Positions 5,059 to 64,000 of a DNA stretch of 64,000 nucleotides are shown piece after piece (the stretch's first letter is position 1; the number at the start of each line of letters is the position of its first letter). Both the position numbers and the translations under genes were made by a program. Source of the stretch: Selaginella moellendorffii (lineage: Eukaryota; Plantae; Lycopodiophyta); NCBI RefSeq assembly GCF_000143415.4, contig NW_003314283.1:1416330-1480329 (forward strand), written 5' to 3'. A model generated the notes under the pieces. It was given only the letters and a program-made list of their open reading frames with translations, was not told the DNA's origin and did no database searches.

Positions 5059-5105
5059 GTATTGGGTATTAAGTCAAGTTTGATAGCACTAACACTTCTT
5101 GACAG
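5059..5105 (+). other. Putative 47-nt spliceosomal intron in the integrase core
   Basis: GTATTG...CTAAC...TTGACAG. Removal restores YHPQT-D-GQTERVN. Confidence 0.8.
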
Positions 5106-21245: not shown

Positions 21246-22330
21246 GTAATCTTGTGACTCCTTTATTGTTTTGGAGTCCGCATCTTTCCCGTGATCCCAA
21301 CTGTAATTGTTTACCACAACTACATCAGCCCGTTTGCTACGTCAAACGCTCATCTGGATCACATCCTCAACTCTCTGAGGAAACCCTCATACTATTCCCA
21401 AGATCCCAAAGTCATTCCCTTATTGGCCCTTTTCCATCCACCACATCATGCACAAGTTCACACATGAACTCAAGTGGAGAGCCATGTCCTCTCGACATGC
21501 TACTCCTCGAGGATAGGTCCATAGCTAGGACTTTCCAATTCCAATGTAAGTGGTGATATACTTGCCCACCAATAAAAGTCGGACTAAAGAACGGCTCTGA
21601 TACCAAATTGTAAGCGACTAATTTTTTCCATTCTACTTTAGTCACTTAACCACACCTCCGACTACTTGGAGGAGTCTCATTCACAACCTCCATAAGTCCC
21701 TCTCAGGACTTGGGGCTTGCTAGCCCCGAGAATGGCATCCATGCCACTCAACTTTTGCACTTGGTCCAAGTGCTCCACGTGTCCGGTCCGGTAATCTCGT
21801 GACTCCTTTATTGTTTTGGAGTCTGCATCTTTCCCATGATCCCAACTATAGTTGTTTACCACAACTACATTAACTCGTTTGCTGCGTCAAACGCTCATCT
21901 GGATCACATCCTCAGCTCTCTGAGGAAACCCTTATACTGTTCCCAAGATCCCAAAGTCGTTCCCTTATTGGCCCTTTTTCATCCACCATATCGTGCATAA
22001 GTTCATGCATGAACTTGAGTGGAGAGCCATATCCTTTCGACATGCTACTCCTCAGGGGTAGGTCCATATCTAGGACCTTCTGATTCCCATACAAGCGGTG
22101 ATATATTTGGCCACCAATAAGAGTCGGACTAAGGAACAGCTCTGATACCAAGTTGTAAGCGACTAAATTTTCCATTCTACTTTAGTCACTTAACCACACC
22201 TCCAACCACTTAGAGGAGTCTCACTCACAACCTCCATAAGTCCTATTTTAGACTTGGGCTTGCTAGCCCTGAGAATGGCATCCCCGCCACTCAACCTTTG
22301 CACTTGATCCAAGTGCTCCACGTGTCCGAT
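21246..22330 (-). repeat. Tandem duplication (~545-bp unit) of LTR end + PBS + leader
   Basis: GTAATCTYGTGACTCCTTTATTGTTTTGGAGTC at ~21247 and ~21791. A second GCTCTGATACCA plus TGTAAGCGACTAA at ~21594-21620. Confidence 0.85.
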
Positions 22331-28600: not shown

Positions 28601-30919
28601 GCCTGGAATCAATCAATCAACCTAGAACGCATCCATGGATGGAGCTTAGATCTTCCTCCGTATGGCCCTATTATGTGAGTGGGCAGTGGGTAGAAAACAA
28701 AGATCACCGGAGGAGGGAGAGTCTTTTCAAAGAGGAGTTGTTGGAGGAAATTGAGGCTCAATTGATGGACAATGACTGAACCTTGAGTTTTGGAGGAAAC
28801 CATGACATAAACATTGGGCTTTGACTTGGATGCATGAGTCCATGCAAATGACAATCTTTCTATTCCTATTCCTTCCTCTTTTTTAAAGTGATAGACAGAG
28901 GGAGATTGTAGCAGCCAAAGAGTGCAGTCAGGCTGCTTCTAGCTTCAGCTTGGACGATGATGAGAAGTATCTGGTGAGGATGTTTACAATAAGGAGAGTT
29001 AGTGCATGAAAAGGTTGAAAAGGTTGAAAAAGTTTGTCACCTACAGAATTGGTTTATTGTCTACCCTAAGTTTGGCAAGTTGACGGACAACAAAAGCACC
29101 ATAGCAAATTGATTTAATAGATTTACATGTATGCAAGAAGTAAGAACACAAAAACATGAGGATTTATATTTTAATAAATATAAATCATATATACATGAAC
29201 AACCCCCACATATAGCAATATTGCATACAAATGATAAATCAGAAATAGTAGAACATTTAAAAACAGAAACAATGGCAATGTCATATGTATCACTAGAAAA
29301 AAAAATTAAAAATTACAGATAATAAATTTACAAAGAAAACCTGGAACAAATATACAAATATTCATAAAACAACTACAAAAATATATACAGAATATAGATA
29401 TAAAAAACCAGTAATAATTACAGGAGATTTTAATATTGACTACCAAAAAGAAGAAGCAAAACCACTTCAAACAACAACAGAGAAAGAAGGATACATACAA
29501 AAAATAAAACACAATACATGTAATAATGAATTAATAGAGCATATATGGATAAAATATATAATATATATAAAAGCAGGAATAGCACCTGCATATTGGACAG
29601 ATTATAACAAACTATATATCCTAATAAAAAATATTTAAAAACAAAAGTAAATCAAGCATTGCTGCAATGCAACGCACAGCAATTTTATTTGTTAATATAC
29701 CTTCTATAAAGTTTTGAATACTACTTAAATGAGAACAAAATAGGGGAGTTGTATTCATATACAAAATTATTGATAATTAGTATTTTAAGAAATTAAATTC
29801 TTAAGTAGGCAAAGAAATGGTGGAGAAGTTTATATCTATTTTATTTATGTTATGGATATAAATCCTTTAAGGTTTTTGAATTCAAATGATAACAAAAACC
29901 TAATCTTTATAACTAAATGTGACAAATTTTTTAAACTTTAGAATAATTTTGCATTTATAATATAAAAATTAAATCAGATAAATTTTTCTACATTTATTCA
30001 TTTGAGTCTTGATTGTATTTAAATGATGATGAATGTGAAATCTCTCTAAGGGAGGTAATTTGTTTTTCAAAATATTTAACAATTTATATAAATGCCATCT
30101 TTTTTCTTTTGTGAGAAAATGTATGATATAGTGGTAAAATGTTATTAAATTTGTGTTCATGTATTTTTTTGTTTTAGAATATTTTTGTATAAACATTTAT
30201 AAGGTATTTTTAATGTTATTTCAGATATTGTTTTAATGCATTTCTCCCATTACAGTTAAAACGTTAAAAAGCTAGTTGAGGGAGGCATATCAACTATGTG
30301 AGTTCTTGTTAAGCTTTCCATCAACCTAAACTGCAATATGGACTGTAGCAGTGGGCACAACTGAACACCATCGAGATAAACTGTTTGCACAAGAATGCCA
30401 TCACCAATTGCCTTAAGCACTGTGTCCATCTTAAGAAGTGGATTTGAGCCATTCAGGCTGTTGATGCAGTCAATGATGATCCCCTTGAGCTCAGGTGAGT
30501 ACCCAACAACGTTCCGAATCATTTGGTCATATTCTTTTGACACCAAGACCCACTTCTTTACTTGTCCACCCCTCACCAGCTCCTGCCACTGTTCAAACGA
30601 CCTTACACTCCTCCGTTGTAAAACTTCACAACAGCATCCCATGAGTCCCTTGTGCCCTCATGTCAAGGAATATATGCCGATCTCAGCACTTCTTCATGCT
30701 CGCATTTGTCTGGAATACCCTCTGCCTTTGAGAAAACTATGCCAGTTAGAGGCATACATCGAAGACCATTGACAGAATCTCCAGGAAGCTTAGACGATTC
30801 CACCAAACGCTATGTCAAACTAAACCCTAAACCTTTCTTCTTTCTCCTTTTAAGCTATAGTTATCGGACAACTTTTATCGAATTTTAAAAATTGGGCGGG
30901 ACTGTGGAATTTAGGGCAA

Positions 30920-43325: not shown

Positions 43326-46300
43326 ATGGAGAAGCCGATGCTGCTCCTTACGCTGCTCGTGCTGCTGCTTCTGGGATCGATCGACGCGCAGATCTCCAAG
43401 CCGATTGCTCACGACTCCAATGTGGAGGAGAGCGTCAAGCAGAACAAATTCCGCAGCCGCGAGGCCAGCGACGATCTTCTCGGCTATCCAAACCTGTGAG
43501 TACTTCTTTAGCTCGCTTTCTTGCTTAGCTGCATTCGTTGATCGATTGGAAATTTTCCTCTTACCAATAGTTTTTTTTTTTCCCATCTAGAGACGAAGAA
43601 GCTTTGGCGAACACGCAGTGTCCTAGGAACTTAGAATTGCGATGGCAGGCAGAAGCGAGCGCAAGCATCTACGCTGCTCCTCTCATCGCAGACATCAACG
43701 GGTGAGTATCCTTGTTTCTTTCTCTTGATGCGAAGAAAAATGTGGATTGATTTGATACAAGGGATGGGAAACTGGACATTGTTGTGCCGTCTTTCGTTCA
43801 CTACCTCGATGTTCTTGAAGGAGCAGATGGTGAAAAAATGCAAGGTGTGTTGAGTCGTGGAGCTTGATGGTGCTACTGATTTATGCTTGTCCTCGCTGCT
43901 TAGGATGGCCGGCTTATCACCAATCCACAGTGCATTCCAGTCCCTTGCTTTACGACATTGACAAGGATGGATATAAGGAAATTCTTTTGCCGACTTACAA
44001 CGGAGAAGTTCTTATGTTCCGGTAAGTTGAAGCAAAAGTTTGAAGCTCAAAACAAGGTTTTCTCTTTTTTTTTCTTTGTCAAGTTCGTCGGGCTATCAGA
44101 TAAATGAGAAGATCACAGTTCCAAGGTTACGGGTTCGAAAGGACTGGTATGTTGGATTGAGTCCTGACCATGTGGACCGATCTCATCCTGATGTTCACGA
44201 TGATGGTTTAGTGATTCCTTCTCCTCCTGGTACGTATCAATGTCTCTGTGTAAAATCCATTCGCTCTTGTTTAGCTCTTGCGGCTTGCAGGCGTGTCAAG
44301 TGACCACGCGGTAGCGAATGCTTCTAGTACCATCGCCACGAAGGATGGACAGAACGGTTCTAGTACTATCGAGACGAAGGATGGACAGAACGGTAGCTCT
44401 CCCGGCAATGTTTCGGCAAAACTGGACAACTCAACCTTAAGCAACACTCCGGAGACATTGAACGTTTCAGCAACTGCAACTGCAGGGAATGGATCGGCTA
44501 CTTTGAAAGTTAGCGACGTCGCTGAAGCTGGGTCAGAACTTCGCATGGGTACTACAAGTCCGAATAACACGCAGGGAACACAGAGACGGCTTCTCCAACA
44601 GGAAGCCACAGCCGGTGACAACCGAGAGAAACTGGAAGCGGATGCAGAGGCCACGTTTGATGTTTTCCGTGATAAGGGAGGGCTGAGTGACGAGTATGCT
44701 TACGATTATGACGACTACGTAGACGAATCGATGTGGACCGATGATCACTGGGTTCGGGCTGTCCACGAAAGGGAAGAAGACTTTATCGACATAGACGCAC
44801 ATATTCTTTGCACACCGGTAAGTGTGTCTTGTTTGGTTTTTGGCAGATGGCTAACATTGCCACTGTCTCCAGGTGATTGCAGACATTGACAAGGATGGAG
44901 TCGACGAACTTATTGTTGCTGCTTCCTTTTTCTTTGATCGTGAGTAAGCTCTCCTGCCGCTTTTCAACCTTGCATTTGGTAGCACAGGTATTCATTCTTT
45001 CTTTGCAGGTATTACGAAGCAAATCCTGACTTGCTCAGCAAGGATGTCGATATTAGCAAATACGTTGCTGGAGCCATCTTCGTTTTTAGTTTGGACACGA
45101 AACAAGTCAAGTGGAAAATACATTTCGACCTTAGTACCGATTCTGTGGCGTTCCGTGCGTATATCTATTCATCGCCGACGGTAGTCGACCTGGATGGCGA
45201 TGGATACCTCAGTATCGTAGTTGGGACATCCTTCGGATTCGTTTATGCTCTGCATTACAACGGTAATACTTGTTTTTTTTTCTGTTCTCTCGCAGGCCTC
45301 AGAAACTTTTCCTTGTTTTGTTTGCAATCCAGGTATTGTAAGGAAAAACTTCCCGCTACAAATGGGAGAGATTCACGCCCAGGTTGTTGCGGCTGACGTA
45401 AACGACGATGGGAAAGTCGAGATTGTCACCGCTGACACAAGAGGCAATGTTGTTGCCTGGGAGACCGATGGCAAGCTATTGTGGGAAGTTCATCTCAAGA
45501 GTATGATAGCTCAAGTAAGTTTTTGGTTCGTTTCTCTAGTTTTTGAAACAAACTTGTCTTTGCAGGCGCCGACTGTGGGCGATGTGAATGGCGATGGAAT
45601 AACTGACGTGGTTGTTCCGACTGCTTCAGGCAACATCTACGTTTTGAAGGGCACCGACGGCTCATATGTTCCCCCGTTTCCGTTCCGTACGCATGGCCGG
45701 ATCATGGCTTCGGTGTTGCTACTTGATTTTGGTAACAAGGAATCGGAGCAAGCCGACGTGGTCTTGGTTGCAACTTCGTTCGATGGCTACCTGTACATTA
45801 TCGATGGGAAAACTGGCTGTGCCGACGCAACAGATATTGGAGAAACATCGTAAGCCTCGAGAGCTGCTCGTGATTACGTACTGATTTCTTTTTTTCGTTA
45901 CAGATATACCATGGTTTTAGCGGAGAATGTTGACGGAGGCGACGATCTCGATCTGATAGTTACAACCATGAATGGAAACGTCTACTGTTTCCAAACCCCA
46001 GTGAAACACCACCCCTTGAAGGTATGAATGTGCATAGCCTCGTGTATTCAAAGTGATCTTATCTCCATTTGCAGGCATGGCCGACAGCAAACCACGGGAG
46101 GAACGTCCTGTCACCTCGCTACAATCGCGAAGGCGTTTATGCTCTACCTTCGTCCAGAAAGTTTCGAGACGAAGCCGGCGAGAGCTTCTGGGTGGTGTTT
46201 AAAATCGTGGATCAGCACAACTTGCACGGGCCTTACAACGTGACTGTAAGTTCCTCCTCGAAGCTCGGCCTTTCCATTTCTCCAAAACTTATCCTTTGTT

Positions 46301-46636
46301 TCTCTCGCACAGCTGACGCTCTTGGTCCCGGGGAACTACCACGAGCCTCGAAGGATCATGCAGTGGCATCGCTACGATCAACCGGGGGTCCAGAAGCTCA
46401 AAGTCCCGTGCGTGCCAATCCGGAGCACTGGAACAGTGACGCTGGAGATGGTGGACAGGCACGGCCTCGCTTTCACCGACGAATTCTCGCTAACGTTCCA
46501 TATGCACTACTATCGACTCCTCAAATGGTTCGTGGTTCTACCATTGCTGGGAATGCTTGTAGCCATCGTTGGTCTTCATCCCGAAGATCACGTCTCGCTA
46601 CCTTCTTTCTCTTCCAATGGTAGGCACCAAATGTAG
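43326..46636 (+). CDS. DEX1: DEFECTIVE IN EXINE FORMATION 1 homolog (FG-GAP repeat membrane protein), multi-exon
   Basis: Signal peptide, [23 protein letters not shown], repeated DxxxDG motifs (DLDGDG, DVNDDG, DVNGDG), C-terminal [11 protein letters not shown] plus TM helix. Confidence 0.93.
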
Positions 46637-46748
46637 GAACCATGGTTGAAGTTAACTCTAGTCAAGGTTTAAAAGTAAACTCTAGTTAATTTTTCCTAAA
46701 GCCCTAGCTATGGCGGCCATTTGACGAGCGCTCTCTCTGGCGGTCGCG

Positions 46749-49264
46749 ATGGCGCCTCTCCCACTTATCGGTGAGTTTCTTCGCAGATCTCTCGAGGTTA
46801 AACTGATTCGTCGCGGCGATCGCAGTGCGGAGCGCCGAAGGGCTGACGCTGCTAGGCGGCGAGAGCGAGAAGCTGCAGAGGTAGAATTTTGGTTTCTTGA
46901 CGTCCTAGCTCTCACACATTCTTCGCATTCTTCCATTTGCGAAGGCTTGCTTGCGCTGGAGCATCGGTTAGCAAGGATGGAAGCGAGCTAGCTGTGATCA
47001 CTGGCGATGGGGTGGATGTCTTTGATCCAGTGACTTGCAACAAAATCCAATCTTTTCGGTTGGATGGTGTTGTTGCTGCTGTCTTCTCGTCGGCCGGATC
47101 GTTTCTACAGATCTTTCGAAAGGCAACCGGTCCGGAAGACAAGAATGTTGGCATCTGGGACGTGAAAACTGGGGAGGCAGTGGTTCTCTTATATCAGAAA
47201 AACTTTTCAAAGTCAAGCTGGTAAGAAAACTTTTTTCTTCCTTTCTTTTTGTTTATAGTCTTGAATTCGTTTGGTTGTGTTTACAGGCCGATTCTCCAGT
47301 TCAGCGACGACGATTCTGTGGCTTGCCGGCTTGCAACCAACTCGGTCCAGATCTACGATGCCAAAGACTTTGCAAAGGGTGTCGTCGATCATTTGCATTT
47401 GCCTGGAATTCAAGCTGTGAAACTTTCTCCAGCTCCTCCGTCCTATCTCGCAACGTTTATTCCGGAGAGCAAGGTTTTAACTTACGACGATCTTTCTCAT
47501 ATCTTACATGGTTTTCTGGTTTTATCAGGGACAACCGGCCGTGGTGCAAATATATGAAAGTAAAGAGGCTAGCAAATGTCAGGCACTGGCTCGACGTAGC
47601 TTCTTTAAGTCGAGTAGCGTCACCATGACTTGGAACGCGGGCTCGACCGGATTGCTTGTGCTAGCGGTCACTGACGACGATAAATCCAACCAAAGCTACT
47701 ATGGCGACACCAAATTGTATTACTTGAAAAGCGATGGGACTTGTGAAGGGACGGTTCCTCTGAGTAAGTTCATGTTTGTTCTAGCTCGTTAATGTGATGA
47801 ATCTTGTGCAGACAAAGAGGGGCCTATCCATGACGCTCAGTGGTCCCCGACCGGGAAAGAGTTTATTGTCGTCTATGGCTGTATCCTTTCAAGCGTTTTA
47901 TATCTATACTGTATCACTTAACGAGACTTCCAGACATGCCTGCTAAAGCTGCTCTCTTCGATACACAATGCCGGCAGGTTTTTGATTTTGGATCTGGACC
48001 TTATAACACCGTGCGGTGGAATCCCTTTGGAAGCTGTATCCTTGTGGCGTTTCTTTTCTTTTTTGTACTTTGGCTAGTTCTTCCTGACAGGTTCAAGTTA
48101 TCTGTTTGGCTGGGTTCGGGAATCTTCCGGGTGATATGGTAAACAATAAGTGTTTTATGATACACTGCTTATCTTTTCCACTTCTTCTTCAGGTGTTTTG
48201 GGACCGGAACACGCTAAAATCGATTGGAAACACGAAATCTCCCTGCTCAGTAACGTGTGAATGGGCACCCGATGGCCGGCTACTGATGACGGCCACGACC
48301 GCTCCACGAATGCGAGTCGATAACGGGTATATGTTTGCTATTTTACGTGAGCGGCGATTACCTCGACTTGCAACATCAGGATAAGGATCTTCAAGTACAC
48401 GGGAGCTCTGTTGGAGGAACAAAAGATCAACGATCTTTATCAAGTGAGTGCTTGGTTATATTTTGCTTTAGATGTAATATTTCCTCGTTTGTTTCATCAG
48501 GCGGACTGGCTACCTGGACAGTATGTTGAGAGGCCAGCTTCGCCAGTTTCTGCCAAGAGTTCACAAAAAGAGAAACAACCATCTGGTATGTTTTTGATTA
48601 TAAAAGAAATAAAAATTCTTTACTCGGCTTGTTCTATGCTTTTTAGCGGCTGCTATAGCCAAATCTGCAGCTTACCGTCCACCTCATTCAAGCATGTCGG
48701 CGTCAGTGCGTGCTCAGGTAAGTAATCAGAACAAATCGGGCTGTATTACGTGATGGAAAACTCTGTTGCAGCTATTTGGTGAAGAGGACTCCAATGCTGG
48801 AAGGTTTGGAGCAAATCCTTTTGTCTGAACTTTTTCTAACGTTTTTTTTTTTTTTTTTGCGAACCCAGTGGGTTGAGCAAATCGGCTCTTAAGAACAAAA
48901 AGCGACGTGAGAAACAGAAAGAAAAGTCTGAAACACTTCCCGACGCACCAGTGAGTAGTAGTTCATTCTTTTTCTGCAGCTAACTCCTTTCGTCCCTGGT
49001 TGTAGGAAGTCGTGAAGGAGGTCAACAGTGAGACATCTTCAGGTGAGACTGAGTCGTTTAAACTGCCTTTTGCTGTGCTCAGAAATTTAGCTTACAGGAG
49101 ATGAGTTTGCGAAGAAAATTCGAGCTCTGAACAAGAAGCTGCGGCAGATAGAGGAACTCAAGAACAAGTTAAGTGGGCAGACGCCATCTCAAGAACAGAA
49201 GAGCAAGCTTCAGCAGGAGGCGTTATTGAGGGAAGAAATCAGGAAATTGGAGCTCTCTTCATAG
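46749..49264 (+). CDS. eIF2A: Eukaryotic translation initiation factor 2A, multi-exon
   Basis: NQSYYG, GPIHDAQWSP, VYGYMPAKA, LAGFGNLPG, TATTAPRMRVDNG, AAYRPPH, C-terminal KKIRALNKKLRQIEELK. Confidence 0.93.
47881..47933 (+). other. U12-type (minor spliceosome) GT-AG intron, 53 nt
   Basis: 5' site GTATCCTTT, branch TCACTTAAC close to the AG. Splicing gives VYG-Y-MPAKA. Confidence 0.85.
48036..48097 (+). other. U12-type GT-AG intron, 62 nt
   Basis: 5' site GTATCCTT, branch-like TTCCTGAC. Splicing gives GS-F-ICLAGFGN. Confidence 0.75.
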
Positions 49265-49787: not shown

Positions 49788-51245
49788 ATGGCGATTGTAG
49801 GAACGACGAGCTTTCCTCGTGTTTACGCAAATGGAGATAAGGGGAGAATTAGGGAAAGTGGTAGCATGGCGGTGACAAGTCGTCCGCGAACTTCATGGCT
49901 GTCGGTTTACAAGATCTCCGACACCATCTGGAAGAGGATCATCCACTTCCGGGGGCAGCCAACTTCGTCGAGTGTCACAATTGTCACGGACAAAAGGAGC
50001 AAGAGCGATGAGAAGCAGGAGGACAAGATTGCGTCCGTGGTAGCCGACCAAGCCGACCCTTCGGTCGCTTGGGAGCAAAGGGTCAAAGACGTGGAAGCCG
50101 AGAAGCGGCGTCGAGCGCTGCTCAACCCGGGATTTAGCTTCTCAGCTGCTGGGCTTTTGTTCCCTTACCACCTGGGCGTGTGCCAGTGCCTCATGGAGCG
50201 GAACTATATCACGGTACGATCGAGCTCCAACTCTTCTCCATTTTCTGCAACTTTTCCTTTCTATCTTCGCAGGTGGATACTCCTTTAGCTGGATCGTCGG
50301 CTGGAGCGCTCGTTTGCGCTGTTGTAGCTGCAGGGATGAGCATGCAAGACGCACTGGTCGCAACCAAGGATCTAGCACAAGATTGTCGTGCCAACGGGAC
50401 CGCTTTCAGGCTCGGGGTAAGAGAGATCTCTCGAGGTACTGAGTCTGATTCTAGTTTTCTGAGAGCTCCTCTTTATTGTCTCCGTCACTAGGCTGTGCTG
50501 AGGAGAGTTTTGTACAAAGTTATGCCCGATGATGCGCACGTTAAGGCGAGCGGGAGGATCAGAGGTATGGAGCTGTCTCTTTTCTCTCTCCCTTGTGTCA
50601 TGCTAAGTTCACTACTTCTCTCTGCAGTTGCAATCACGCAACTCTTTCGAGTACCAAGAGGCCTGCTCGTTGACCAGTTTGATTCCAAAGAAGATCTGAT
50701 CAACGCTTTGCTTACGTCGTGTTTCATTCCCGGGTAAGTAGTTTGCTCTTGCGTTCCATTAAGATGGGAGCTTGACTGGGTTTTAGTTATCTAGCACCAC
50801 GACCTGTTACCGTCTTCAAGAACAGACTGTGCATCGACGGCGGGTTCACGCTCTTCATGCCCCCTTCAGCTGCTGAAACAACGGTTCTTTCGTGTCACTT
50901 GCTAAGATTCGAGTTGGCTTCTGAAACTTTCGCTTTGCTTTTACACAGGTACGAGTGTGTGCCTTTTCTGCCAAGCGCCTCGGTCTTCAAGACACAGTGG
51001 GTATCAGCCCGGACTGTAATCCCGACAACCGAGCCTCTCCAAGACAGGTACAGAAATAATAAGAAGCTACAAGGTACATAGCTAAGTTCTCGACTGTTTT
51101 GCAGCTTTTAAACTGGGCTTTAGAACCGGCTGGAGATGCAGTATTAGATGAGCTCTATGTGTTGGGCTACAAGGATGCTGCAGTGTGGGCAAATGCAAAT
51201 CCTTTGATCAGTTTTAGAGGCAAGGGAACAGCTGCTCCAGTTTGA
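49788..51245 (+). CDS. Patatin-like phospholipase (PNPLA/ATGL-like), multi-exon
   Basis: GFSFSAAGLLFPYHLGV, lipase motif GSSAG, DGG motif. Last exon LLNWALEP...PV* (stop 51243-51245). Confidence 0.9.
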
Positions 51246-51688
51246 AGATGCAACAAACGATTGCTGTATCATACTAGAGGCATTCATGCGAAGGTAAGAA
51301 AGGAAATACAGAGATTCTTTGGGACACCATTCTCTAAGCATTTGTACACAAAGAAGAAGAACACAAAGAAGAAGAGAAGAAAAACCAGGCATTGACAAAA
51401 GTTCCTTGTTCTACATGGTTGTCAAAAGAATCAAACGTTGTCAAAAGAAACAAACAAGAAACTACTTGTGAAGCTTCATGATCAGTTGTGTGACTTTGTC
51501 AATAGCGTTCTATTTTCCCAGCCCACGTTTGAGAATTTTCCAGTCAAGCGCGTAGGTACCGGGAAGGCGGGCGGCTTCCTGGTATAAAAGCCCAACCAGG
51601 GAAACCCAGGCAATTCATCGATCCCAGTCTACAATCTTCCATCCTCTAGCCTGAAATTTGAGATTTTTCTCTTTTTCTCATAACACCC

Positions 51689-52498
51689 ATGGCAAGTTCA
51701 TATCCAAAGGACAAGATTGCATTCCTGTACATCCACAGAGAGAGTGGTGAGATTGGCTTCGTCTCACAATCTGCGTCTAGGCATGTCCCAGTACTAGCAG
51801 CCAAGTGCGATTTCTTGTTCTCCTCCATGGTCGCGAGCGACAAGGCGGAAGATTTAGAGGCGGCAAAGCAGGCCACACGCTCAGTTGCTCCAGATATGAA
51901 CAAGTACACCATTTCCATGCTTGGAGCAGCAGCTGACCAGGAGTGGACAGCCACCGTCTACGAGAGATACATTGGGAACGGGTTCGAGGGCGTGGTTTTC
52001 ATCCAGGATCCCAATCTCCAGGAGGAGGACAGCGAGAGCATGAGCTATCTGGCCTCTCTGCTGCTGGACAACGGCGTCATGACCAGAGATTGCCTTCTGG
52101 AGCCCTTCAGCTCGCACACACCTCAAGAGGTGGACGACATCACCTCCCAAGTTGTGGACATCATCGAGAAGAATTACATCCACTTCCCAAAGCACGACCA
52201 GTGGTTCACAAGTGGGGGCAAGCAGAGGTTTGCGGACAAGGTGAGGTACCACGTCGCAAGAAACATTCCACTCGAGTTCGTCTTGCCCGCATTTCCAGTC
52301 AAGTCGTGCAATCCCGACAAGACTCTGGGAAAGTGCCCGGACAAGGCCGAGGAGCTGGCCATCCATTCCATGAAGATTGTTGCGGATCTCATCAAGGCCG
52401 TGTATGCTCCAGGCGTGCACTACAACGTCGCCTCGGATGGCCATGTCTTCTCTGATCTCGTCGGCTCGGACGACGCTGCTGTGGATTCTTACGGCGAG
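51689..52498 (+). pseudogene. Partial copy of the DIT1/PvcA isocyanide-synthase gene, broken just before an assembly gap
   Basis: Protein identical to the first 270 aa of 59505-61070. Diverges at ~52499 (TGTTG...), ~25 nt before the N run. Confidence 0.8.
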
Positions 52499-52624
52499 TG
52501 TTGAAGCACTGGATTTGCCCAGACNNNNNNNNNNNNNNNNNNNNNNNNNNNNNNNNNNNNNNNNNNNNNNNNNNNNNNNNNNNNNNNNNNNNNNNNNNNN
52601 NNNNNNNNNNNNNNNNNNNNNNNN

Positions 52625-55600
52625 TTGTAGGCGCAGGCCTTCTCAAGAATTTGACATAATAGGTAATGACCGTGGGATAGATAAAGACACAGAGTCTTTC
52701 TAAGGGGAGCCAAAGTTACCTTAAATAAATGTTGGAACAACCCAAGGAGTTAGGGGTGTATTTAAAAGATAAGTTGATATTCTCATTATATGGACAAATA
52801 GTTCTAAAAAGCAAAGATAGCCCATATAGAACAAAGGATAATTAAATGTTAGAGTAACACTTGCCAAAATGGTCTTTGAAAGTAGGACATGAATACAAAA
52901 AGTTATATTCTAATGAGTTAACACCTTAAAAGTAGCTATGATGTTAGGACTTTACAGGTCATCGGATTAGCAAAGTCCAAAGCCTGGATGATTTAGTGGA
53001 GTCAAGGGATGGTCCTAAAAGGATGGTGAAAGCTGTTAGACTAAGGTGGGTTTTACATTACAAAGGACTATAAGGATTATGAGATTTAAGTATGAGAACA
53101 ATAGGTATTTTATTGATAGTAAAATATGCCATACTAAAGTTGTGGGAAAGGTGTTCCTAGAAGAAAACAACTTTGGCATAAAGTTGTATATAAACACCAT
53201 GGTGTAGTACTAACTGATAGTTGGCATGAGAAATAACTACTTTGGTCTTGGCAAAAACCTAAACACGAGTGAAAAGTGTCGTAAAAGTAGGCTCATGGAA
53301 TTGATGGGGTGGAGACCCCAAATGTTTCAAGAGATGAGGCTTTGAAGTCAAGTTTGCTAATTCATGAGGACCCTTTGTCAAAGGAATTCCACTGGAAATG
53401 AGATTAGCATAGCCTAAACTAAAAAGCATGCAATTCAAATGTATGGACCCAAATAATAATGAAAGTGTGAAAGCATTAACAATGAGTTGTAGGATTTGAT
53501 GACTATGAAGCAGCTAAACAAATATGTGGCATAATTGATTCGATTGATAGAGGTTAACTTGTCAAGATTTCTTATTAGGATAAGAAGGTTAGATATATCC
53601 CACAGGGGGGTAAATTGCTTATGTTACAAAATAATAAGTTAATATCATAAAGGGAAATGCTCATTGTTAAAGAAGGTCATCATTGGGACACCTAAACATT
53701 CAAAAACATCAGAAAGTTGTTATTAATATTATAAGAGTATTAGATAAGGCATTAGACAAATCCAAAAGGGATTTTGGCAAGGTTAGTCACGGGCATATAA
53801 AAGCCCATAAGTAGCAATATTAATCCTGGTATATGGGATTATNNNNNNNNNNNNNNNNNNNNNNNNNNNNNNNNNNNNNNNNNNNNNNNNNNNNNNNNNN
53901 NNNNNNNNNNNNNNNNNNNNNNNNNNNNNNNNNNNNNNNNNNAGACATAATAAAAAGCGCAAAGCTATCCTTCTAGCATGAAGGAAAATAACCAAAAAAA
54001 ACATGTGAGGCCAAAAGCAAGTAGTAAAATAAGAGGACCGAACTATAGTAATCAAAAAGCATAACCGAGAGTAATTATCCAAGTTGGGATTGGAAAATTA
54101 AGTAGATACTCAAAGGTGTTGTTACTGGCAATTGTGATGCCATGGAGAGTCTAGAGTATGGAATTATCTATGTTAGAACATATGACAATTAGAAAGTTTG
54201 TGAAAAAAGAGGTTTTAGCAATAAAGTCCCTTCAAAATTCCCAAAAACAATTCTAAATAAGTTAGTACCTAAAAAGATAAGTGTAAATGGTTCATAAAAT
54301 ACATGAAATTAAAGTGGCACAAGTGCCAGAAGTGTAGTTTTGAAGCTTGCCATAAGGCGAGGCTATCAAAGTTGGGGAAGTAGTTCCTGAGTGTTTAAAG
54401 AGATGGTTTTGAACAAAAATTGATGGTTAAGAATTTTCATGCTTATGCATGAAACTATGTTACACTAGTTGAATGACTTGTAAGAGAGATTGGCAAGTCG
54501 GGGGAACAAAAACCCTAGTTGAAGGTGTTGACTTCAAAAAGAAGTGGCCTATGGGGCTAAGCATGGAAGAATCTATGCATAATCACAAACTTGTCAAGTG
54601 AGAGGATTTGACAATTCAGAGAAACTAGGTTTTTAAGCGTGATCCGTAACATACTTTATGTATAAATTGGTGCACCGACATGGGGAGTCACGCTAGGCAT
54701 CTTGGAGTTGTGAGACACAAATCCCTAAACCCTAAAGTGGAGCTAAAAAGGTGCCATGTGGTAGTGGCTAAAGCAGAAGCGAAATAAACATAATACATTT
54801 GGACTAAAAGTTTTGACTTGGACAATCGAGAGTGGGAGTGGAATTCCCAACAAAGTGGTCAAGGAACGAGCATGAAATAAGTAGTAAGTGAATCTCTAGA
54901 AAAGGGACACAAGAGGATCAATACATGACATGTGGAAGTGTCGAGATAGAGTCCGAGATGGAGTCCAAGAATGTCGCGCATGTGACTTCGGGTATCGAAA
55001 GTTACCTGTCGACCTGTCCTTACGGACACTCTTACCTTACTGCCACGATGGCAGGAGGTCGGTATTGCTGGACCCGTTATCAGTCTCCGCCTAAGCTAGT
55101 TGAGAAACTGGTCTTCGCGTGTGCACTTGACCAGATGAGCATAAGGAAGGAATTCCTAAGTGTCTATTTAGTCAAGCATACTTGACCTGGTTAGAGAAAC
55201 TCATTCGTTGACTTGCACTTGCTAGTGTTGGGAACCCCCGTGATATTGAGCTTGGTCCCTCAATATCGCAAGATGATAGCTTACCGTGTCTGCCAAACAC
55301 CCTCGCTATCATGCCCTTTGTGTTAGTCTCATTTCGGTCCCAAATGCTATTTATGGAAAGTGTCCAGATTTGCTCATTTGGCATATCTACGGAATGTAGA
55401 GATCGTCCTGAACACAATGGTGTTCGTCCCATGTCCAAATTCGCAATCTAAAGACATTCCATATTTAGTAAGTTTCGAGCTTGTCCCAGAGACTAACTCC
55501 TAATACTAAGGGAGGCTTGGGGTGAAAGCCCAAAGCGTGTGTTCCTCAAGGGGGGGGGGCTGTGGGGGGTTCCAAATGTATAGTAGGGATAGTGGGTAGG

Positions 55601-58434: not shown

Positions 58435-59061
58435 CTGTCTCTCTGCAGTTGCAATCATGCAACTCTTTTGAGTGCCAAGAGGCCTGCTTGTTGACCAGTT
58501 TGATTCCAAGGATGATCTGATGAACGTGTTGCTTGCGTCGTGTTTCAGAGCAGTTTGCTCTTGCATTCCATTCAGATGGGAGCTTGACTGGTTTTTAGTT
58601 ATCTAGCACCACAATCTGTTACCGTCTTTAACAACAGACTGTGCATCCACGGCAGGTTCACGCTCTTCATGCCCCCTTCAGCTGCTGAAACAACGGTTCT
58701 TTCGTGTCACTCACTAAGATTTTAGTTTTGGCTTCTGAAGCTTTTGTTTTGCTCTTACACGGGTAAGAGTATGTGCCTTTTCTGCCAAGGACCTCGGTCT
58801 TCAAGACACAGTGGGTATCAGCCCGGACTGTAATCCCGACAACCGAGCCTCTCCAAATAATAAGAAGTTAAAAGGTACATACCTAAGTTCTTGACTGTTT
58901 CGCAGCTTTTAAACAGGAAGTCGCCCTCTTGAAGATGGTAAGAAACCCGCAGATTTTTCTTTGATGAGCTCTATGTGTTGGGCTACAAGGATGCTGCAGT
59001 GTGGGCAAATGCAAATCCTTTGATCAGTTTTAGAGGCAAGGGAACAGCTGCTCCAGTTTGA
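58435..59061 (+). pseudogene. Duplicated, decayed 3' fragment of the patatin-like gene
   Basis: Colinear with ~50620-51245. Has a premature stop (TTTTGA), deletions and lost splice sites. Confidence 0.85.
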
Positions 59062-59398
59062 AGATGCAACAAACGATTGCTGTATCATACTAGAGGCATT
59101 CATGCGAAGGTAAGAAAGGAAATACAGAGATTCTTTGGGACACCATTCTCTAAGCATTTGTACACAAAGAAGAAGAACACAAAGAAGAAGAGAAGAAAAA
59201 CCAGGCATTGACAAAAGTTCCTTGTTCTACATGGTTGTCAAAAGAATCAAACGTTGTCAAAAGAAACAAACAAGAAACTACTTGTGAAGCTTCATGATCA
59301 GTTGTGTGACTTTGTCAATAGCGTTCTATTTTCCCAGCCCACGTTTGAGAATTTTCCAGTCAAGCGCGTAGGTACCGGGAAGGCAGGCGGCTTCCTGG

Positions 59399-59406
59399 TA
59401 TAAAAG
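59399..59406 (+). promoter_or_regulatory. TATA box of the isocyanide-synthase-like gene (second copy at ~51583)
   Basis: TATAAAAG ~100 bp upstream of the ATG. Confidence 0.65.
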
Positions 59407-59504
59407 CCCAACCAGGGAAACCCAGGCAATTCATCGATCCCAGTCTACAATCTTCCATCCTCTAGCCTGAAATTTGAGATTTTTCTCTTTTTCTCATAAC
59501 ACCC

Positions 59505-61070
59505 ATGGCAAGTTCATATCCAAAGGACAAGATTGCATTCCTGTACATCCACAGAGAGAGTGGTGAGATTGGCTTCGTCTCACAATCTGCGTCCAGGCAT
59601 GTCCCAGTACTAGCAGCCAAGTGCGATTTCTTGTTCTCCTCCATGGTCGCGAGCGACAAGGCGGAAGATTTAGAGGCGGCAAAGCAGGCCACACGCTCAG
59701 TTGCTCCAGATATGAACAAGTACACCATTTCCATGCTTGGAGCAGCAGCTGACCAGGAGTGGACAGCCACCGTCTACGAGAGATACATTGGGAACGGGTT
59801 CGAGGGCGTGGTTTTCATCCAGGATCCCAATCTCCAGGAGGAGGACAGCGAGAGCATGAGCTATCTGGCCTCTCTGCTGCTGGACAACGGCGTCATGACC
59901 AGAGATTGCCTTCTGGAGCCCTTCAGCTCGCACACACCTCAAGAGGTGGACGACATCACCTCCCAAGTTGTGGACATCATCGAGAAGAATTACATCCACT
60001 TCCCAAAGCACGACCAGTGGTTCACAAGTGGGGGCAAGCAGAGGTTTGCGGACAAGGTGAGGTACCACGTCGCAAGAAACATTCCACTCGAGTTCGTCTT
60101 GCCCGCATTTCCAGTCAAGTCGTGCAATCCCGACAAGACTCTGGGAAAGTGCCCGGACAAGGCCGAGGAGCTGGCCATCCATTCCATGAAGATTGTTGCG
60201 GATCTCATCAAGGCCGTGTATGCTCCAGGCGTGCACTACAACGTCGCCTCGGATGGCCATGTCTTCTCTGATCTCGTCGGCTCGGACGACGCTGCTGTGG
60301 ATTCTTACGGCGAGATGTTTTGGGAGATGGCACACAATCTGTATCCCGGCCTTGTCAATTTCTTTCGCCTGGATGAGTTTCTGCTGGACAACCACAGTGA
60401 CAAAGACATTGCAAAGCTTATCTCCAACACCACCGTGGAGCATCCCGTTGCGACTGAGCTCACCGCCAATGCAGAGAATGCCAGGCGAGCTCTCATGTGC
60501 TTGTTTGGATGTGACGAGTCCACCGTCACCAAGGAGATCAAGGAGGAGCCGGAGACACGCAATCTATATCGTGGCTTCTCCAGGTTCATGCTCGAGGACT
60601 TGTACGAACACAAGAGCTGCAAGAATCTCCCGTCAAAGTCGGCCAAGAAGAAGCTGTGCAGCCAGGTTGCCTTCCTCATGATCCTCAGGAACCGTGCATA
60701 CTCGGCCATGGTGGAGTGGCTCTTCCCTTTGCAGCTGCGCATTTCCATCCACCCGCATCCAAACAGAGGTCCCAAGTATGGCATCAACATCATCCATTCC
60801 TCTCTAGTGGCAGCGCAGCGTTCTTCCGAGGAGAAGAACTTCCACATCCCAACACCATGGCACAACGCGGTGGTGGAGCTGGCAGATGGCAAGTTCATGC
60901 TGCTGCACTCCAAAGTCATCCGAGGTTCGAGTATGCAGGCCAGAGAAATGGCCTGTGAGCAGCTCGACTTGAGTCAACAGTTGCTTCTCAAGCGTCAAGG
61001 CTACAGAATGACGCTGGTGACATATCCAGACGGCAGACCCAGCCACTACAGGCAGGTCAGTGTCTGCTAA
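59505..61070 (+). CDS. DIT1/PvcA-family isocyanide synthase-like protein, intronless, 521 aa
   Basis: LPAFPVKSCN..KTLG..PDKAEELA, SDGHVFSDLVG, YRGFSRFMLEDL, RNRAYS, LRISIHPH...PKYGI, HIPTPWHNAVV. Confidence 0.9.
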   Translation: MASSYPKDKIAFLYIHRESGEIGFVSQSASRHVPVLAAKCDFLFSSMVASDKAEDLEAAKQATRSVAPDMNKYTISMLGAAADQEWTATVYERYIGNGFEGVVFIQDPNLQEEDSESMSYLASLLLDNGVMTRDCLLEPFSSHTPQEVDDITSQVVDIIEKNYIHFPKHDQWFTSGGKQRFADKVRYHVARNIPLEFVLPAFPVKSCNPDKTLGKCPDKAEELAIHSMKIVADLIKAVYAPGVHYNVASDGHVFSDLVGSDDAAVDSYGEMFWEMAHNLYPGLVNFFRLDEFLLDNHSDKDIAKLISNTTVEHPVATELTANAENARRALMCLFGCDESTVTKEIKEEPETRNLYRGFSRFMLEDLYEHKSCKNLPSKSAKKKLCSQVAFLMILRNRAYSAMVEWLFPLQLRISIHPHPNRGPKYGINIIHSSLVAAQRSSEEKNFHIPTPWHNAVVELADGKFMLLHSKVIRGSSMQAREMACEQLDLSQQLLLKRQGYRMTLVTYPDGRPSHYRQVSVC

Positions 61071-63099
61071 TATGTGATAGACGGTTTTGATTCTGGGTAA
61101 ATTCCCTCAGGCCCATTTTTTTGTAAATTTTAAAAAGAGTAAATACCATTTTTTCTCTCACTTCTTTGTCTCCATCTGGGATTCTAAAAATGAACCGTAC
61201 AAACAGAAGAAATAGAGAACATATTGTTGACTGTATAGTGCTTCCTCTGTTACTACAAATATATGAATACCATTACAGCAGTATAGGAGTCACTACTAAC
61301 TTTGACAATCTTTTACTTCTGCTCCTTCTCTGGATCAATGTTGTGAAGAAGAAACCCTGGATCGAAAATTCCTCAATACCGACACTATTCACCGCCTAAG
61401 TTTTACGCTGTGTATTTTTCAGTCCAATTTTGTAAGCGGCTCAAGCTGCACAACACGTTACATGCTTCGCTCCAGCGTAGGCCATCCTGTCTCCAAAAGG
61501 ACGAGACGTGGTCTTTGGCAACTTGAGAACTTTAGGATGTGTTTGACAAGCCTTCTTTTTGAAACAAAGGTTTTTGCAAGACAATGTCATACGTCAAGTG
61601 GAATTTGTGGTCAAAGAATGTTTGCTACTTGTTTTGCATTATACTGTATTTATGCATCATTTTAAACACGTGTTTTAAGAGCAGGAAAGCAGCAAGAAGC
61701 TACCTTCTTTCTTTATGCAAAGTCTCAACCGCCTGATATATAAAATGTAACTATAGTTCTTGTCAGAATTAGATGGCCTGACTTTCTATGGCAAGTTTGG
61801 ATTCACATCAGATTCTCTTCTTTTTATGGAACTTGCTTCCCTGGTATTTGTTTTCTTCTTTGTTGACTTACATAGTTCACGTGTAAGTTCCAGTGCAAAC
61901 TATCAGAGCGAGATATGTACTGTAGGCCCGTGCTTTGCCACCATCGCCTCCATCATACCAGTGCTTCACCCCTGCATTCAGCTCCATCGTCATACGACTC
62001 AGACCACGCTAGCCAAAATTCGAACGACTGCATATTAGGTAAAGTCATACTGCTGCCAATGGCTGACCTGTCCATTCTTTTTCTTGGCCGTATATCATGT
62101 ACCTCCTCCATGATTAACAATTTTATTCATAAACATTCACATGGTTTTGTTTGTGTGGCTTATATTAAATTATTATGAATATACCTTGAAAGCATACAAG
62201 GCCTGTGCCAAACACCCATGTGGAAATAGCAGACATTTTGTGTCATCAAGATGTATGTGAAGCATTCAGTGTGGAATCAAAAGTGAAATAGGGCTTCCCA
62301 GGGACATGAGGAGTGGCCTCGTTTGCATTGAGGACTTGGGGCCCCAGTATTCTCAACCTCATGCCACAGACAACACTTTCAATGCTGTTGGAGAAAAACT
62401 TTTGTCCTTCTGCGATGCAGTATAGGAATGTCAGTGGCCTGGACACACACTGGGAGGCTACACTTGTGAGGCATGGATCCTTGCAAGGCTTACATAGTCT
62501 CATACTGTGTGCTGCCTCAGAAACTCTGGATGAGGAGCTCAGCACAGCCTGGATCAGGGTGCGAGGATTCTCAATGTGAGTGGTGTTGTTGCTGAGATCT
62601 TAGGCAATTGCACTGCATACAATGGCAAATCCAGCATGAGCTAGAGCAGACTTGCTGCAAGCTGCAGCTCGTCTCACTGTGGGTTCCAGCTTTGGAGCGT
62701 TGCCTCCTGTGAGCTGCACTGCTCAGGGCAGGAATGCTGTGCCTTTATAGAGATTCATGAGTGTGGTTAGCTCTAGTAGATCCAACAACGAGGTATCCTT
62801 GGAACATGGCATATGTCCACATGCCAGGTCCACTCAAACTTCTAGCACACCCAAGAGCTGTCTTGAGATGGGATTAGTTCCCCAGGACCTTTAGAGTGAG
62901 GCCAACCAAGGGGTTTCCCACCACCTCTCTACCTATGCAAAACAGAAGAAATTCATCTACCCTTTGGCAGAAAAACATATATTATTATTCATTATACTAT
63001 TTATAACATTATAATATCCAAACAATAGATCTCTAAGAAGAATATGATGCCATTAGCAACTGTGGGATTCTGAAGTTAGCTCTATTTTTTGTGGCTAAA

Positions 63100-64000
63100 T
63101 GTAAGTGACTAATTTTTCCATTTTACTTTAATCATTTAACCACACCTCTGACCATTTGGAGGAGTCTCATTCACAACCTCCATAACTTCAATCTAGGACT
63201 TGGGCTTGATAGCCCCAAGAATGGCATCCATGCCACTAAACCTTTGCATTTGGTTCAAGTGCTCCATGTGTCCAATTCCATGACCCGACACCCCAAGGTA
63301 CCACCAACATATTAACCTATTACGCTAAGGCCTTGCCCATTCACCTTAGTCACACCGATGGTTCAACGCCACCTACATCGCAATCCTATCTCTCAAAGAC
63401 TGGGGCATTCGTCCATGAGTGATTATTCGAGATCCACTCTTTAGCATCCTTAAGATACCTGCAGGTATGGAGAACAACCTTCCCCAATATCCCTTTTACA
63501 GTCCCCACTAAGTCCTTTTTTTGTCCATGGCCGTGTTCGCCAACATTGCCACTGGGACAAGGCCTACAGACCCGACCACTAAGTCTCACTGTCCTCTGGG
63601 ACTTCCTCCTCACATGACTGTATCTTTGGTCATTACACCAAAGGACCACTCGTATTCCTTTCTATAGTCTGGGACTTTAGTACAACATTTTGGAACACTG
63701 TGGCCCTACGCAAGCCTCATAGGTACTCTCCCCACCTTCCGCTTTTGGGTGTTCTAACCATGGGCTTAGAGCAAGGTTTTGTTGAGTTACGCCAGGTATC
63801 CGAGTAAGTAGTGCCACCCACGCTTGGACTGGGAGCATCAACCATTCGATCTCCCGGGGGAACTAAAGCTGGCTCTTGAACATTTCACCAAGCTGCCCCA
63901 CTTGTCGATCCGTATTCACTCTAGTCTTGGACTTCCCAGTGGTCAGTTCATCACCCAACACCTGGGTACAGCCTTCCTGGGCCAAACTCGCCTTTCCTAG
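63100..64000 (-). repeat. LTR of the LARD-like family, running off the window end
   Basis: TGTAAGTGACTAATTTTTCCATT..., colinear with 22154-23090. Has no insertion at the site occupied by the DNA transposon. Confidence 0.9.

What the first reader, a model, noticed from the sequence alone, without database searches (positions are those of the whole stretch)
59505..61070. Intronless fungal-type isocyanide synthase (DIT1/PvcA family) in a plant genome
Seen: an intact 521-aa ORF with all family motifs, a TATA box and no introns, lying beside intron-rich plant genes (patatin, eIF2A, DEX1). Known: DIT1/PvcA/IsnA enzymes convert an amino-acid amine into an isocyanide in bacteria and fungi, and yeast Dit1 makes the dityrosine spore-wall precursor. 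I do not know them as a standard plant family. The N-terminal extension and HIPTPWHN resemble fungal Dit1-type proteins. Inference: horizontal transfer from fungi, implying undescribed isocyanide or N-formyl amino-acid chemistry (metal chelation, defence or spore wall) in a plant.
Basis: partly seen in the sequence, partly recalled or inferred. Interest (0 to 1): 0.88.

Follow-up and report, generated by a model that had tools for sequence, protein, structure and literature searches.

The report
Fungal-type isocyanide synthase in spikemoss
The spikemoss Selaginella moellendorffii carries an intact, transcribed, selectively maintained gene for a Dit1-type isocyanide synthase that most likely came from a chytrid-like fungus; the gene family is already catalogued, but what it makes in the plant is unknown.

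Summary
Window 59505-61070 (+) is an intact 521-aa ORF of the DIT1/PvcA isocyanide synthase family (Pfam 278 bits). The model is confident and superposes on PvcA/PIsnA at Z 34-35. All 44 conserved family columns are kept. The organism is Selaginella moellendorffii (99% identical to an NCBI protein named 'spore wall maturation protein DIT1'). The gene lies in real plant DNA: DEX1, GH3 and PPR genes are in the window, and paralogues sit in gap-free plant loci. RNA-like runs cover it collinearly, and dN/dS among paralogues is 0.13-0.20. The nearest relatives are chytrid fungi (44-49% identity; bacteria at most 35%). A careful tree joins Selaginella and chytrids (95/93), but an AU test does not reject fungal monophyly (p 0.35). 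New here: four deeply diverged Selaginella paralogues and two chytrid genera share a phase-1 intron at the same codon after GHVFSDL. That argues for transfer as fungal genomic DNA and means this window's intronless state is secondary. The N-terminal ~110 residues form a PAS-like domain shared with chytrid proteins. The family's presence in Selaginella is already on record (Lim et al. 2018 and NCBI), and this scan has reported it several times. The product and its role in the plant remain untested.

The parts
59505..61070 (+). Intact intronless ORF, 521 aa, Dit1-type isocyanide synthase (stop codon included)
59511..59834 (+). N-terminal PAS-like domain (residues ~3-110)
   Evidence: Model pLDDT mostly 75-93 here. 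VIA-align Z ~12, rmsd ~2.1 A over ~103 residues against ARNT/HIF2a PAS-B and LOV2. Collinear with the N-terminus of Geranomyces Dit1, E 7e-07.
59931..61058 (+). Isocyanide synthase catalytic domain (residues ~143-518)
   Evidence: PvcA 3e59 Z 34.9, rmsd 2.2 A, 302 of 305 residues; PIsnA 9dh4 Z 33.8, 311 of 315 residues. Pfam PF05141.
60276..60278 (+). Codon Val258 after GHVFSDL. A phase-1 intron sits at this site in paralogues P0005, P0006, P0007 and P0010 and in two chytrids. It is absent here, a secondary loss.
59399..59405 (+). TATAAAA, a candidate TATA box
   Evidence: Read directly from the sequence. The RNA-like contig of run X2 begins at 59453.
59453..61214 (+). Span covered by contigs of RNA-like runs: the ORF plus at least 52 nt 5' and at least 144 nt 3'
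   Evidence: tables 2 and 8. Runs X1 and X2 have 0 mismatches, and there are no joints within the ORF.
51689..52504 (+). Partial second copy (codons 1-270, then a stop), ending 22 nt before the N gap
50617..51688 (+). Duplicated upstream region of the partial copy, 91.7% identical to 58438-59504
52525..52624 (.). Assembly gap (100 N). A second gap lies at 53843-53942.
45221..46620 (+). Context: exons of a plant DEX1 gene, on the same gap-free stretch as the partial ICS copy

Best explanation
The ORF encodes a functional Dit1-type isocyanide (isonitrile) synthase of Selaginella moellendorffii. Established knowledge of the IsnA/PvcA/Dit1 family gives the likely reaction. The enzyme condenses the alpha-amino nitrogen of an aromatic L-amino acid, most likely tyrosine, with a carbon from ribulose-5-phosphate to give an alpha-isocyano acid. 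That product can end up as the N-formyl amino acid, as in yeast Dit1. This step is inferred, not shown. Shown here: the gene belongs to a family of a dozen or more Selaginella copies that form one clade. The clade descends from a single gene most likely acquired from a chytrid-like fungus as genomic DNA, because the fungal phase-1 intron after GHVFSDL and the N-terminal PAS-like domain came along with it. The family then diversified under purifying selection. The subclade containing this window's gene lost the intron precisely and was amplified locally. There is a partial copy 7.8 kb upstream, and the reference scaffold has two copies about 14 kb apart. No conserved partner enzyme accompanies the gene, so any downstream tailoring would be done by plant enzymes and is unknown.
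For: Family and fold. All 44 conserved columns are kept. Species and paralogues: (99% to the NCBI protein; paralogues on at least 10 scaffolds). Plant integration: for the window. Searches show five 21-kb reference loci without gaps, in which the ICS gene lies beside PPR-DYW, zf-LSD1, cellulose synthase and kinase genes. GC3 is 0.70, within the range of neighbouring plant exons. Transcription: (14 RNA-like runs from at least 9 studies; coverage confined to the ORF plus UTR-sized flanks, collinear). Selection: dN/dS 0.13-0.20 at dS 0.37-1.13. Fungal/chytrid origin: the top non-plant hits are all chytrids at 44-49%, bacteria reach at most 35%, and metagenome contigs at most 40%. Trees give Selaginella+chytrids at SH-aLRT 94 and UFBoot/SH-aLRT 95/93. 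The N-terminus is collinear with the Geranomyces protein. The shared phase-1 intron occurs in P0005, P0006, P0007 and P0010, and in Phlyctochytrium and Geranomyces. It is absent in a basidiomycete and an ascomycete.
Against: The AU test does not reject a tree with the named fungi monophyletic and Selaginella outside them (p 0.41 and 0.35). Only two chytrid and two Dikarya gene structures were examined. The run type 'RNA' is a guess by the tool, and contigs cannot give strand or expression level. No enzymatic or metabolite evidence exists. No paper in the held library links Selaginella to isocyanides. Other lycophyte genomes could not be searched, so the age and the restriction to Selaginella are untested. 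The full copy is separated from DEX1 by two assembly gaps. Only the partial copy is gap-free with DEX1.
Confidence: 0.8

Rival explanations
1. Ancient vertical inheritance. The gene was present in an early eukaryote ancestor and survives only in fungi, Selaginella and a few other lineages after massive loss.
For: The AU test allows Selaginella to sit outside a monophyletic fungal group. Lim et al. 2018 report sporadic ICS genes in oomycetes and one amoebozoan.
Against: Among the named hits of two very large protein searches, Selaginella moellendorffii is the only plant. Bootstrap support joins Selaginella to chytrids inside the fungal Dit1 clade. The intron and the N-terminal domain are shared specifically with chytrids and not with the sampled Dikarya.
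Confidence: 0.07
2. Transfer from a fungus other than a chytrid, from an unsampled early-diverging fungus or another eukaryote, or in the reverse direction from plant to chytrid.
For: Chytrid monophyly relative to Selaginella is weakly resolved (80-83). An unidentified RefSeq protein, P0123, branches nearby. The long Selaginella stem (0.66-1.07) could distort its placement.
Against: Five chytrid genera from several orders carry the gene, and two of them hold it in a conserved cluster. The family is widespread in fungi but occurs in only one plant, so the fungus-to-plant direction needs fewer events.
Confidence: 0.1
3. Direct acquisition from bacteria, as a PvcA/IsnA-type gene.
For: The family is abundant in Actinomycetota, Cyanobacteria and Proteobacteria (450 confirmed loci).
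Against: Bacterial identity is at most 35%, against 44-49% for chytrids. The score against the NCBIfam PvcA equivalog is 118.8, far under the 600 cut-off. The bacterial matches cover only the catalytic domain (query residues ~180-480) and, as bacterial genes, have no spliceosomal intron. The bacteria form the outgroup in both trees.
Confidence: 0.02
4. Fungal contamination or a chimeric assembly.
For: Two N gaps separate the full copy from the DEX1 gene in this window.
Against: The partial copy is gap-free with DEX1. Five reference loci of 21 kb have no gaps and carry plant genes on both sides of the ICS gene. The Selaginella introns are short (55-67 nt), which I recall as typical of this genome. 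GC3 is plant-like. The gene occurs in many independent runs. The closest fungal protein is only 49% identical.
Confidence: 0.01

Closest known systems
Chytrid Dit1-like isocyanide synthases (Blyttiomyces, Cladochytrium, Phlyctochytrium, Zopfochytrium, Geranomyces, Irineochytrium)
   Same: They have the highest identity (44-49%), the same two-domain layout with a homologous N-terminal domain, and the same phase-1 intron after GHVFSDL. They are the sister group in the trees.
   Different: The chytrid genes lie in a conserved cluster with an OPT transporter, an AMP-binding enzyme and a beta-lactamase-family gene (plus an NRPS-like gene in Geranomyces), and they have a further intron at ..[D]EW. 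None of this is seen at the Selaginella loci.
Saccharomyces Dit1 and the ascomycete dit1-dit2 cluster (N-formyl-tyrosine, then the dityrosine spore-wall precursor)
   Same: Same Pfam family and the same overall length class with an N-terminal extension. NCBI names the Selaginella proteins after it. About 41% identity in the domain.
   Different: No Dit2-type P450 lies beside any Selaginella copy examined, whereas Podospora dit1 sits next to a P450 and a Ctr transporter. The N-terminal region shows no pairwise similarity to yeast Dit1. The ascomycete Dit1 proteins form a separate clade (100/99).
Bacterial PvcA / IsnA / PIsnA (PDB 3e59, 9dh4, 9dhm)
   Same: Same catalytic fold over essentially the whole bacterial protein (Z 34-35, rmsd 2.2-2.6 A) and the same invariant residues.
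   Different: The bacterial enzymes are single-domain proteins of about 310-330 aa without the PAS-like N-terminal domain. They share 24-29% identity in the structural alignment. The plant protein scores below the PvcA equivalog cut-off.

Membership tests
DIT1/PvcA/IsnA isocyanide synthase family (PF05141) | Pfam domain above the gathering score | tested here: met
   277.8 bits against 26.4, covering 268 of 273 profile positions
DIT1/PvcA/IsnA isocyanide synthase family (PF05141) | PvcA/IsnA three-dimensional fold | tested here: met
   Model pLDDT 89.3, pTM 0.91. Foldseek E 1e-21, target TM 0.83-0.87. VIA-align Z 33.5-34.9.
DIT1/PvcA/IsnA isocyanide synthase family (PF05141) | Family-invariant residues (K205, P217, D218, E221, SDGHVFSD, R412/S414/H416, TPWH) | tested here: met
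   44 of 44 conserved columns are retained. Which of them are catalytic could not be taken from a paper, because the PIsnA paper is not held.
DIT1/PvcA/IsnA isocyanide synthase family (PF05141) | Isonitrile formation from an amino acid and ribulose-5-phosphate | not testable with these tools
   Needs an enzyme assay
Fungal Dit1-type (dit1-dit2 spore-wall pathway) | N-terminal extension before the ICS domain | tested here: met
   Collinear with Geranomyces over residues 6-174 against 3-176, E 7e-07. Not detectable against yeast Dit1.
Fungal Dit1-type (dit1-dit2 spore-wall pathway) | Adjacent Dit2-type cytochrome P450 partner | tested here: not met
   No P450 within 10 kb at 8 Selaginella loci, and none among the window ORFs scanned. 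A P450 is present at Podospora and near the Violaceomyces gene. An unlinked Dit2-like P450 elsewhere in the genome was not searched for.
Fungal Dit1-type (dit1-dit2 spore-wall pathway) | Placement inside the fungal Dit1 clade | tested here: inconclusive
   Best trees: Selaginella+chytrids at 94 and 95/93. The AU test does not reject fungal monophyly, p 0.41 and 0.35.
Bacterial L-tyrosine isonitrile synthase PvcA (NCBIfam NF045653 equivalog) | Score above the equivalog cut-off | tested here: not met
   118.8 bits against a cut-off of 600
Fungus-to-plant horizontal gene transfer | Gene physically integrated in the recipient genome | tested here: met
   Gap-free loci with plant genes on both sides; window context
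Fungus-to-plant horizontal gene transfer | Shared rare genomic character with the donor lineage (intron position and phase) | tested here: met
   A phase-1 intron in the codon after GHVFSDL occurs in 4 Selaginella paralogues and 2 chytrids, and is absent in 1 basidiomycete and 1 ascomycete
Fungus-to-plant horizontal gene transfer | Absence from other plant lineages | tested here: inconclusive
   Among named hits, S. moellendorffii is the only plant. Unannotated lycophyte genomes could not be searched with these tools.

The most novel reading that the evidence does not exclude
Selaginella makes isonitrile or N-formyl-tyrosine-type metabolites with a chytrid-derived family of isocyanide synthases that carry a PAS-like domain. 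That would be a land-plant isocyanide pathway not described in any paper I could find. Because the gene entered as fungal genomic DNA with its intron still in place, the family would also be an unusually well-marked case of eukaryote-to-eukaryote transfer into a vascular plant.
Probability: 0.45. Interest if true: 0.75.

Novelty: new member of a known kind. Interest (0 to 1): 0.55.

Why it matters
Isocyanide natural products are known from bacteria, fungi and marine animals. In microbes they act in metal binding and uptake and in virulence (PMC5974471, PMC7949033). I found no paper describing an isocyanide synthase pathway in a land plant. Selaginella keeps a dozen or more copies under purifying selection and transcribes at least this one, which argues that the enzyme does something useful in the plant. 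The shared intron and N-terminal domain are concrete, checkable markers of a fungus-to-plant transfer and point to chytrids, which include plant parasites, as the donors. The claim can be tested directly by expressing this intronless ORF and looking for the product. The value is tempered because the sequences are already annotated by NCBI and were listed, without analysis, by Lim et al. 2018.

Tried and rejected
(1) A conserved, divergently transcribed partner gene upstream of the ICS, by analogy with dit1-dit2. The Pfam-less 573- and 578-aa neighbours at L084 and L087, the window's upstream region and four other upstream regions share no similarity by tblastx. Rejected.
(2) A conserved biosynthetic neighbourhood. 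A BAHD transferase (PF02458) occurs at 2 of 7 loci, plant-type 2OG oxygenases at 1, and a head-to-head second ICS at 1. This is too inconsistent to call a cluster.
(3) Exact look-up of the window protein: not on record. The window differs from reference scaffold GL377593.1 (gene region 95-98% identical, flanks 80-86%; 7 amino-acid differences; dS 0.018), so it is another haplotype, assembly or array member.
(4) Naming bacterial and unnamed representatives through cluster look-up gave no names. I used GTDB loci instead.
(5) Literature. There were no hits for Selaginella with isocyanide synthase, pyoverdine or dityrosine, and the three hits with 'isocyanide' were irrelevant. The PIsnA structure paper was not found. 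The id I recalled for Richards et al. 2009 is not held.
(6) The metagenome scan for closer donors found nothing above 40% identity over the domain.
(7) A search for a Dit2-like P450 elsewhere in the genome was not attempted.
(8) The patatin and eIF2A neighbours were not found among the 30 long ORFs scanned.
(9) The stretch upstream of the ORF (54-59.5 kb) has no convincing ORF.

Full report
OBSERVATION. It matches Pfam PF05141 (DIT1_PvcA) at 277.8 bits against a gathering score of 26.4. It also matches the solved isonitrile synthases PIsnA (9dh4/9dhm, E 3e-28) and PvcA (3e59, E 1e-25) by sequence. Against the NCBIfam PvcA equivalog it scores 118.8, far below the 600 cut-off, so it is not a PvcA orthologue. 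A TATAAAA lies at 59399-59405.

ORGANISM AND CONTEXT. The best database hit is a 521-aa NCBI protein named 'spore wall maturation protein DIT1 [Selaginella moellendorffii]', 99% identical, with 7 amino-acid differences and dS 0.018. The window is not identical to that reference scaffold. The gene region is 95-98% identical and the flanks 80-86%, so it is another haplotype, another assembly or another member of a local array. The window holds ordinary plant genes:
- multi-exon DEX1 (FG-GAP and DEX1 beta-sandwich domains);
- GH3;
- a PPR gene;
- a FAF1-like gene and a NIF phosphatase;
- a Ty3/gypsy element.
A second, partial ICS copy lies at 51689-52504. Its coding part is 809/810 nt identical to the full copy, but its upstream kilobase is only 91.7% identical. 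It breaks at codon 271, 22 nt before a 100-N gap, and no 3' half follows. The reference scaffold encodes the identical protein twice, about 14 kb apart.

NOT CONTAMINATION. Paralogues lie on at least ten large S. moellendorffii scaffolds. Five 21-kb reference loci have no gaps and carry plant genes on both sides of the ICS gene: PPR-DYW, zf-LSD1, cellulose synthase, kinases and aldehyde dehydrogenase. In the window, the partial copy is gap-free with DEX1. GC3 of the ORF (0.70) lies within the range of neighbouring plant exons (0.47-0.83).

EXPRESSION AND CONSTRAINT. Fourteen small, RNA-like runs from at least nine studies hold 35-58% of the sampled words of a 3.2-kb stretch in which the ORF makes up 49%. 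The RNA label is the tool's guess. In three of these runs the contigs cover only 59453/59494 to 61117/61214. Two of them show zero mismatches, and none has a joint inside the ORF. A large DNA-like run also has thin coverage outside that span. This fits an unspliced mRNA with short UTRs. Contigs give no strand or expression level. Pairwise dN/dS among the window gene and six paralogues is 0.13-0.20 at dS 0.37-1.13, which shows lasting purifying selection on several copies.

FOLD. An AlphaFold2 model built on a 76-sequence alignment has mean pLDDT 89.3 and pTM 0.91. Residues ~143-518 superpose on PvcA (Z 34.9, rmsd 2.2 A, 302 of 305 residues) and on PIsnA (Z 33.8, 311 of 315 residues). All 44 invariant or near-invariant family columns are kept. 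Residues ~3-110 form a PAS-like domain, with Z ~12 and rmsd ~2.1 A over ~103 residues, spanning whole ARNT/HIF2a PAS-B or LOV2 domains. This N-terminal region aligns collinearly with the Geranomyces protein (residues 6-174 against 3-176, E 7e-07). Pairwise BLAST does not detect it in yeast Dit1.

ORIGIN. In a word-indexed search of 5.8 billion proteins and an exhaustive HMMER search of 1.84 billion cluster representatives, every named hit above 50% identity is S. moellendorffii. The next best hits are all chytrids at 43-49%: Blyttiomyces, Cladochytrium, Phlyctochytrium, Zopfochytrium, Geranomyces and Irineochytrium. Ascomycete Dit1 proteins follow at about 40%. Bacteria reach at most 35% (450 confirmed GTDB loci), and metagenome contigs at most 40% over the domain.

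A quick ML tree of the domain (86 rows, LG+C20) shows:
- Selaginella as one clade (100) on a long stem;
- that clade sister to chytrids (SH-aLRT 94);
- both inside a clade with basidiomycete and ascomycete Dit1 (95);
- bacteria outside.
A careful full-length tree (51 rows, 530 columns) gives Selaginella plus chytrids 95/93. AU tests, however, do not reject a tree that keeps the named fungi together and Selaginella outside them (p 0.41 and 0.35). The sequence phylogeny therefore favours nesting within fungi but does not compel it.

The family is not intronless as a whole. Paralogues P0006 and P0005 have a GT..AG intron of 55 and 57 nt, phase 1, in the Val codon after GHVFSDL. P0007, which is about 50% identical to the window protein, has a 67-nt intron at the same codon and phase. 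The annotated P0010 protein simply reads through the same intron. Phlyctochytrium (60 nt) and Geranomyces (77 nt) have a phase-1 intron in the homologous Ile codon after GHVFSDL. The basidiomycete Violaceomyces has one exon running through this motif, and Podospora dit1 has no intron at all. The intron-bearing paralogues span the deepest splits of the Selaginella clade, so the ancestral plant gene had the intron. The window's subclade (the window gene, P0001-P0004 and the second gene in L086) lost it precisely. By my rough estimate, a chance coincidence of position and phase is about 4 in 1,560 positions. With the shared N-terminal domain, this supports transfer of fungal genomic DNA from a chytrid-like donor. 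It excludes a bacterial source and shows that the intronless state is secondary.

PARTNERS. The chytrid genes lie in a conserved cluster of a beta-lactamase-family gene, an OPT transporter, an AMP-binding enzyme and the ICS, with an NRPS-like gene as well in Geranomyces. There is no P450. None of these accompanies the Selaginella genes. The Selaginella neighbourhoods differ from locus to locus (BAHD transferase at 2 of 7, 2OG oxygenases at 1), and the upstream neighbours are unrelated to each other. Only the synthase seems to have been kept.

WHAT IS KNOWN. Lim et al. 2018 (PMC5974471) state that eukaryotic ICS proteins occur outside fungi in ten oomycetes, one amoebozoan and 'one species of moss'. 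Their supplement lists the SELMODRAFT proteins under Streptophyta. NCBI annotates the proteins as DIT1. I found no paper in the held library on their origin, expression or chemistry. Earlier reports of this scan reached the same reading on other windows of this genome, including arrays about 28 kb before and about 12 kb beyond this window. None of the summaries shown mentions the shared intron. I reached my reading before opening those notes, and they are not independent evidence.

VERDICT. The gene is real, intact, transcribed and constrained. It is a Dit1-type isocyanide synthase of probable chytrid origin in Selaginella. It is a further copy of a family that is catalogued but unstudied. Its product and role in the plant are unknown and can be tested directly.

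Noticed in passing
window 51689-52504 and gaps 52525-52624, 53843-53942: The partial ICS copy is 809/810 nt identical to the full copy in the coding part, but its upstream kilobase is only 91.7% identical. It ends in a stop 22 nt before an assembly gap. This could be gene conversion, a truncated duplicate or an assembly break.
   Followed up: partly
window 58447-59249: A 3283-nt contig in two RNA-like runs (X1, X3) matches this stretch just upstream of the ICS gene in four pieces, with small replacements and 2-10 mismatches per piece. It looks like a transcript from a paralogous copy of the repeated upstream region. No convincing ORF was found.
   Followed up: partly
window 59511-59834 (residues ~3-110): The N-terminal extension of this Dit1-type protein is predicted to be a PAS-like domain (Z ~12 against ARNT/HIF2a PAS-B and LOV2). 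It is homologous to the N-terminus of the chytrid proteins. Its ligand or role is unknown.
   Followed up: partly
L088:11378-11445 (P0007) and protein P0010: P0007 reads SDSHGFSD where the family has the near-invariant SDGHVFSD, so this paralogue may be catalytically altered. The annotated P0010 protein reads through the conserved intron, so the reference gene model appears to be wrong.
   Followed up: partly
L089 and L090 (Geranomyces, Phlyctochytrium): The chytrid ICS genes sit in a conserved cluster: a beta-lactamase-family gene, an OPT oligopeptide transporter, an AMP-binding enzyme and the ICS, plus an NRPS-like gene in Geranomyces. I found no description of this cluster. The ICS-cluster survey I opened (PMC10153163) never mentions chytrids.
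   Followed up: no
L083:6346-8027, L084:5858-7239, L087:15331-20999: BAHD-type transferases (PF02458) lie 2-3 kb upstream of two diverged ICS paralogues, and two plant-type 2OG oxygenases lie downstream of a third. These are possible tailoring enzymes or chance neighbours.
   Followed up: partly
window 44278-47628: A DEX1 gene lies about 4 kb from the partial ICS copy. From memory, DEX1 is needed for exine (spore/pollen wall) patterning in Arabidopsis, and the ICS family's yeast namesake makes a spore-wall precursor. This is probably a coincidence.
   Followed up: no
window 26001-30000: A stretch of about 2-4 kb is very AT-rich (GC 0.20-0.34) and non-tandem, unlike the rest of the window (GC about 0.45-0.55). 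Its origin is unknown.
   Followed up: partly
window 1978-5521; repeats at 5659-6284, 22147-23095 and 63100-64000: There is a Ty3/gypsy retroelement (zinc knuckle, RT, RNase H) and dispersed repeats. One repeat family recurs just downstream of the ICS gene, which ties that contig to the rest of the plant window.
   Followed up: partly
L086:7324-9143 (minus strand): A second ICS gene lies head-to-head with P0004 on reference scaffold GL377587.1. It is 94% identical to the window protein over residues 118-520 and also lacks the intron.
   Followed up: partly
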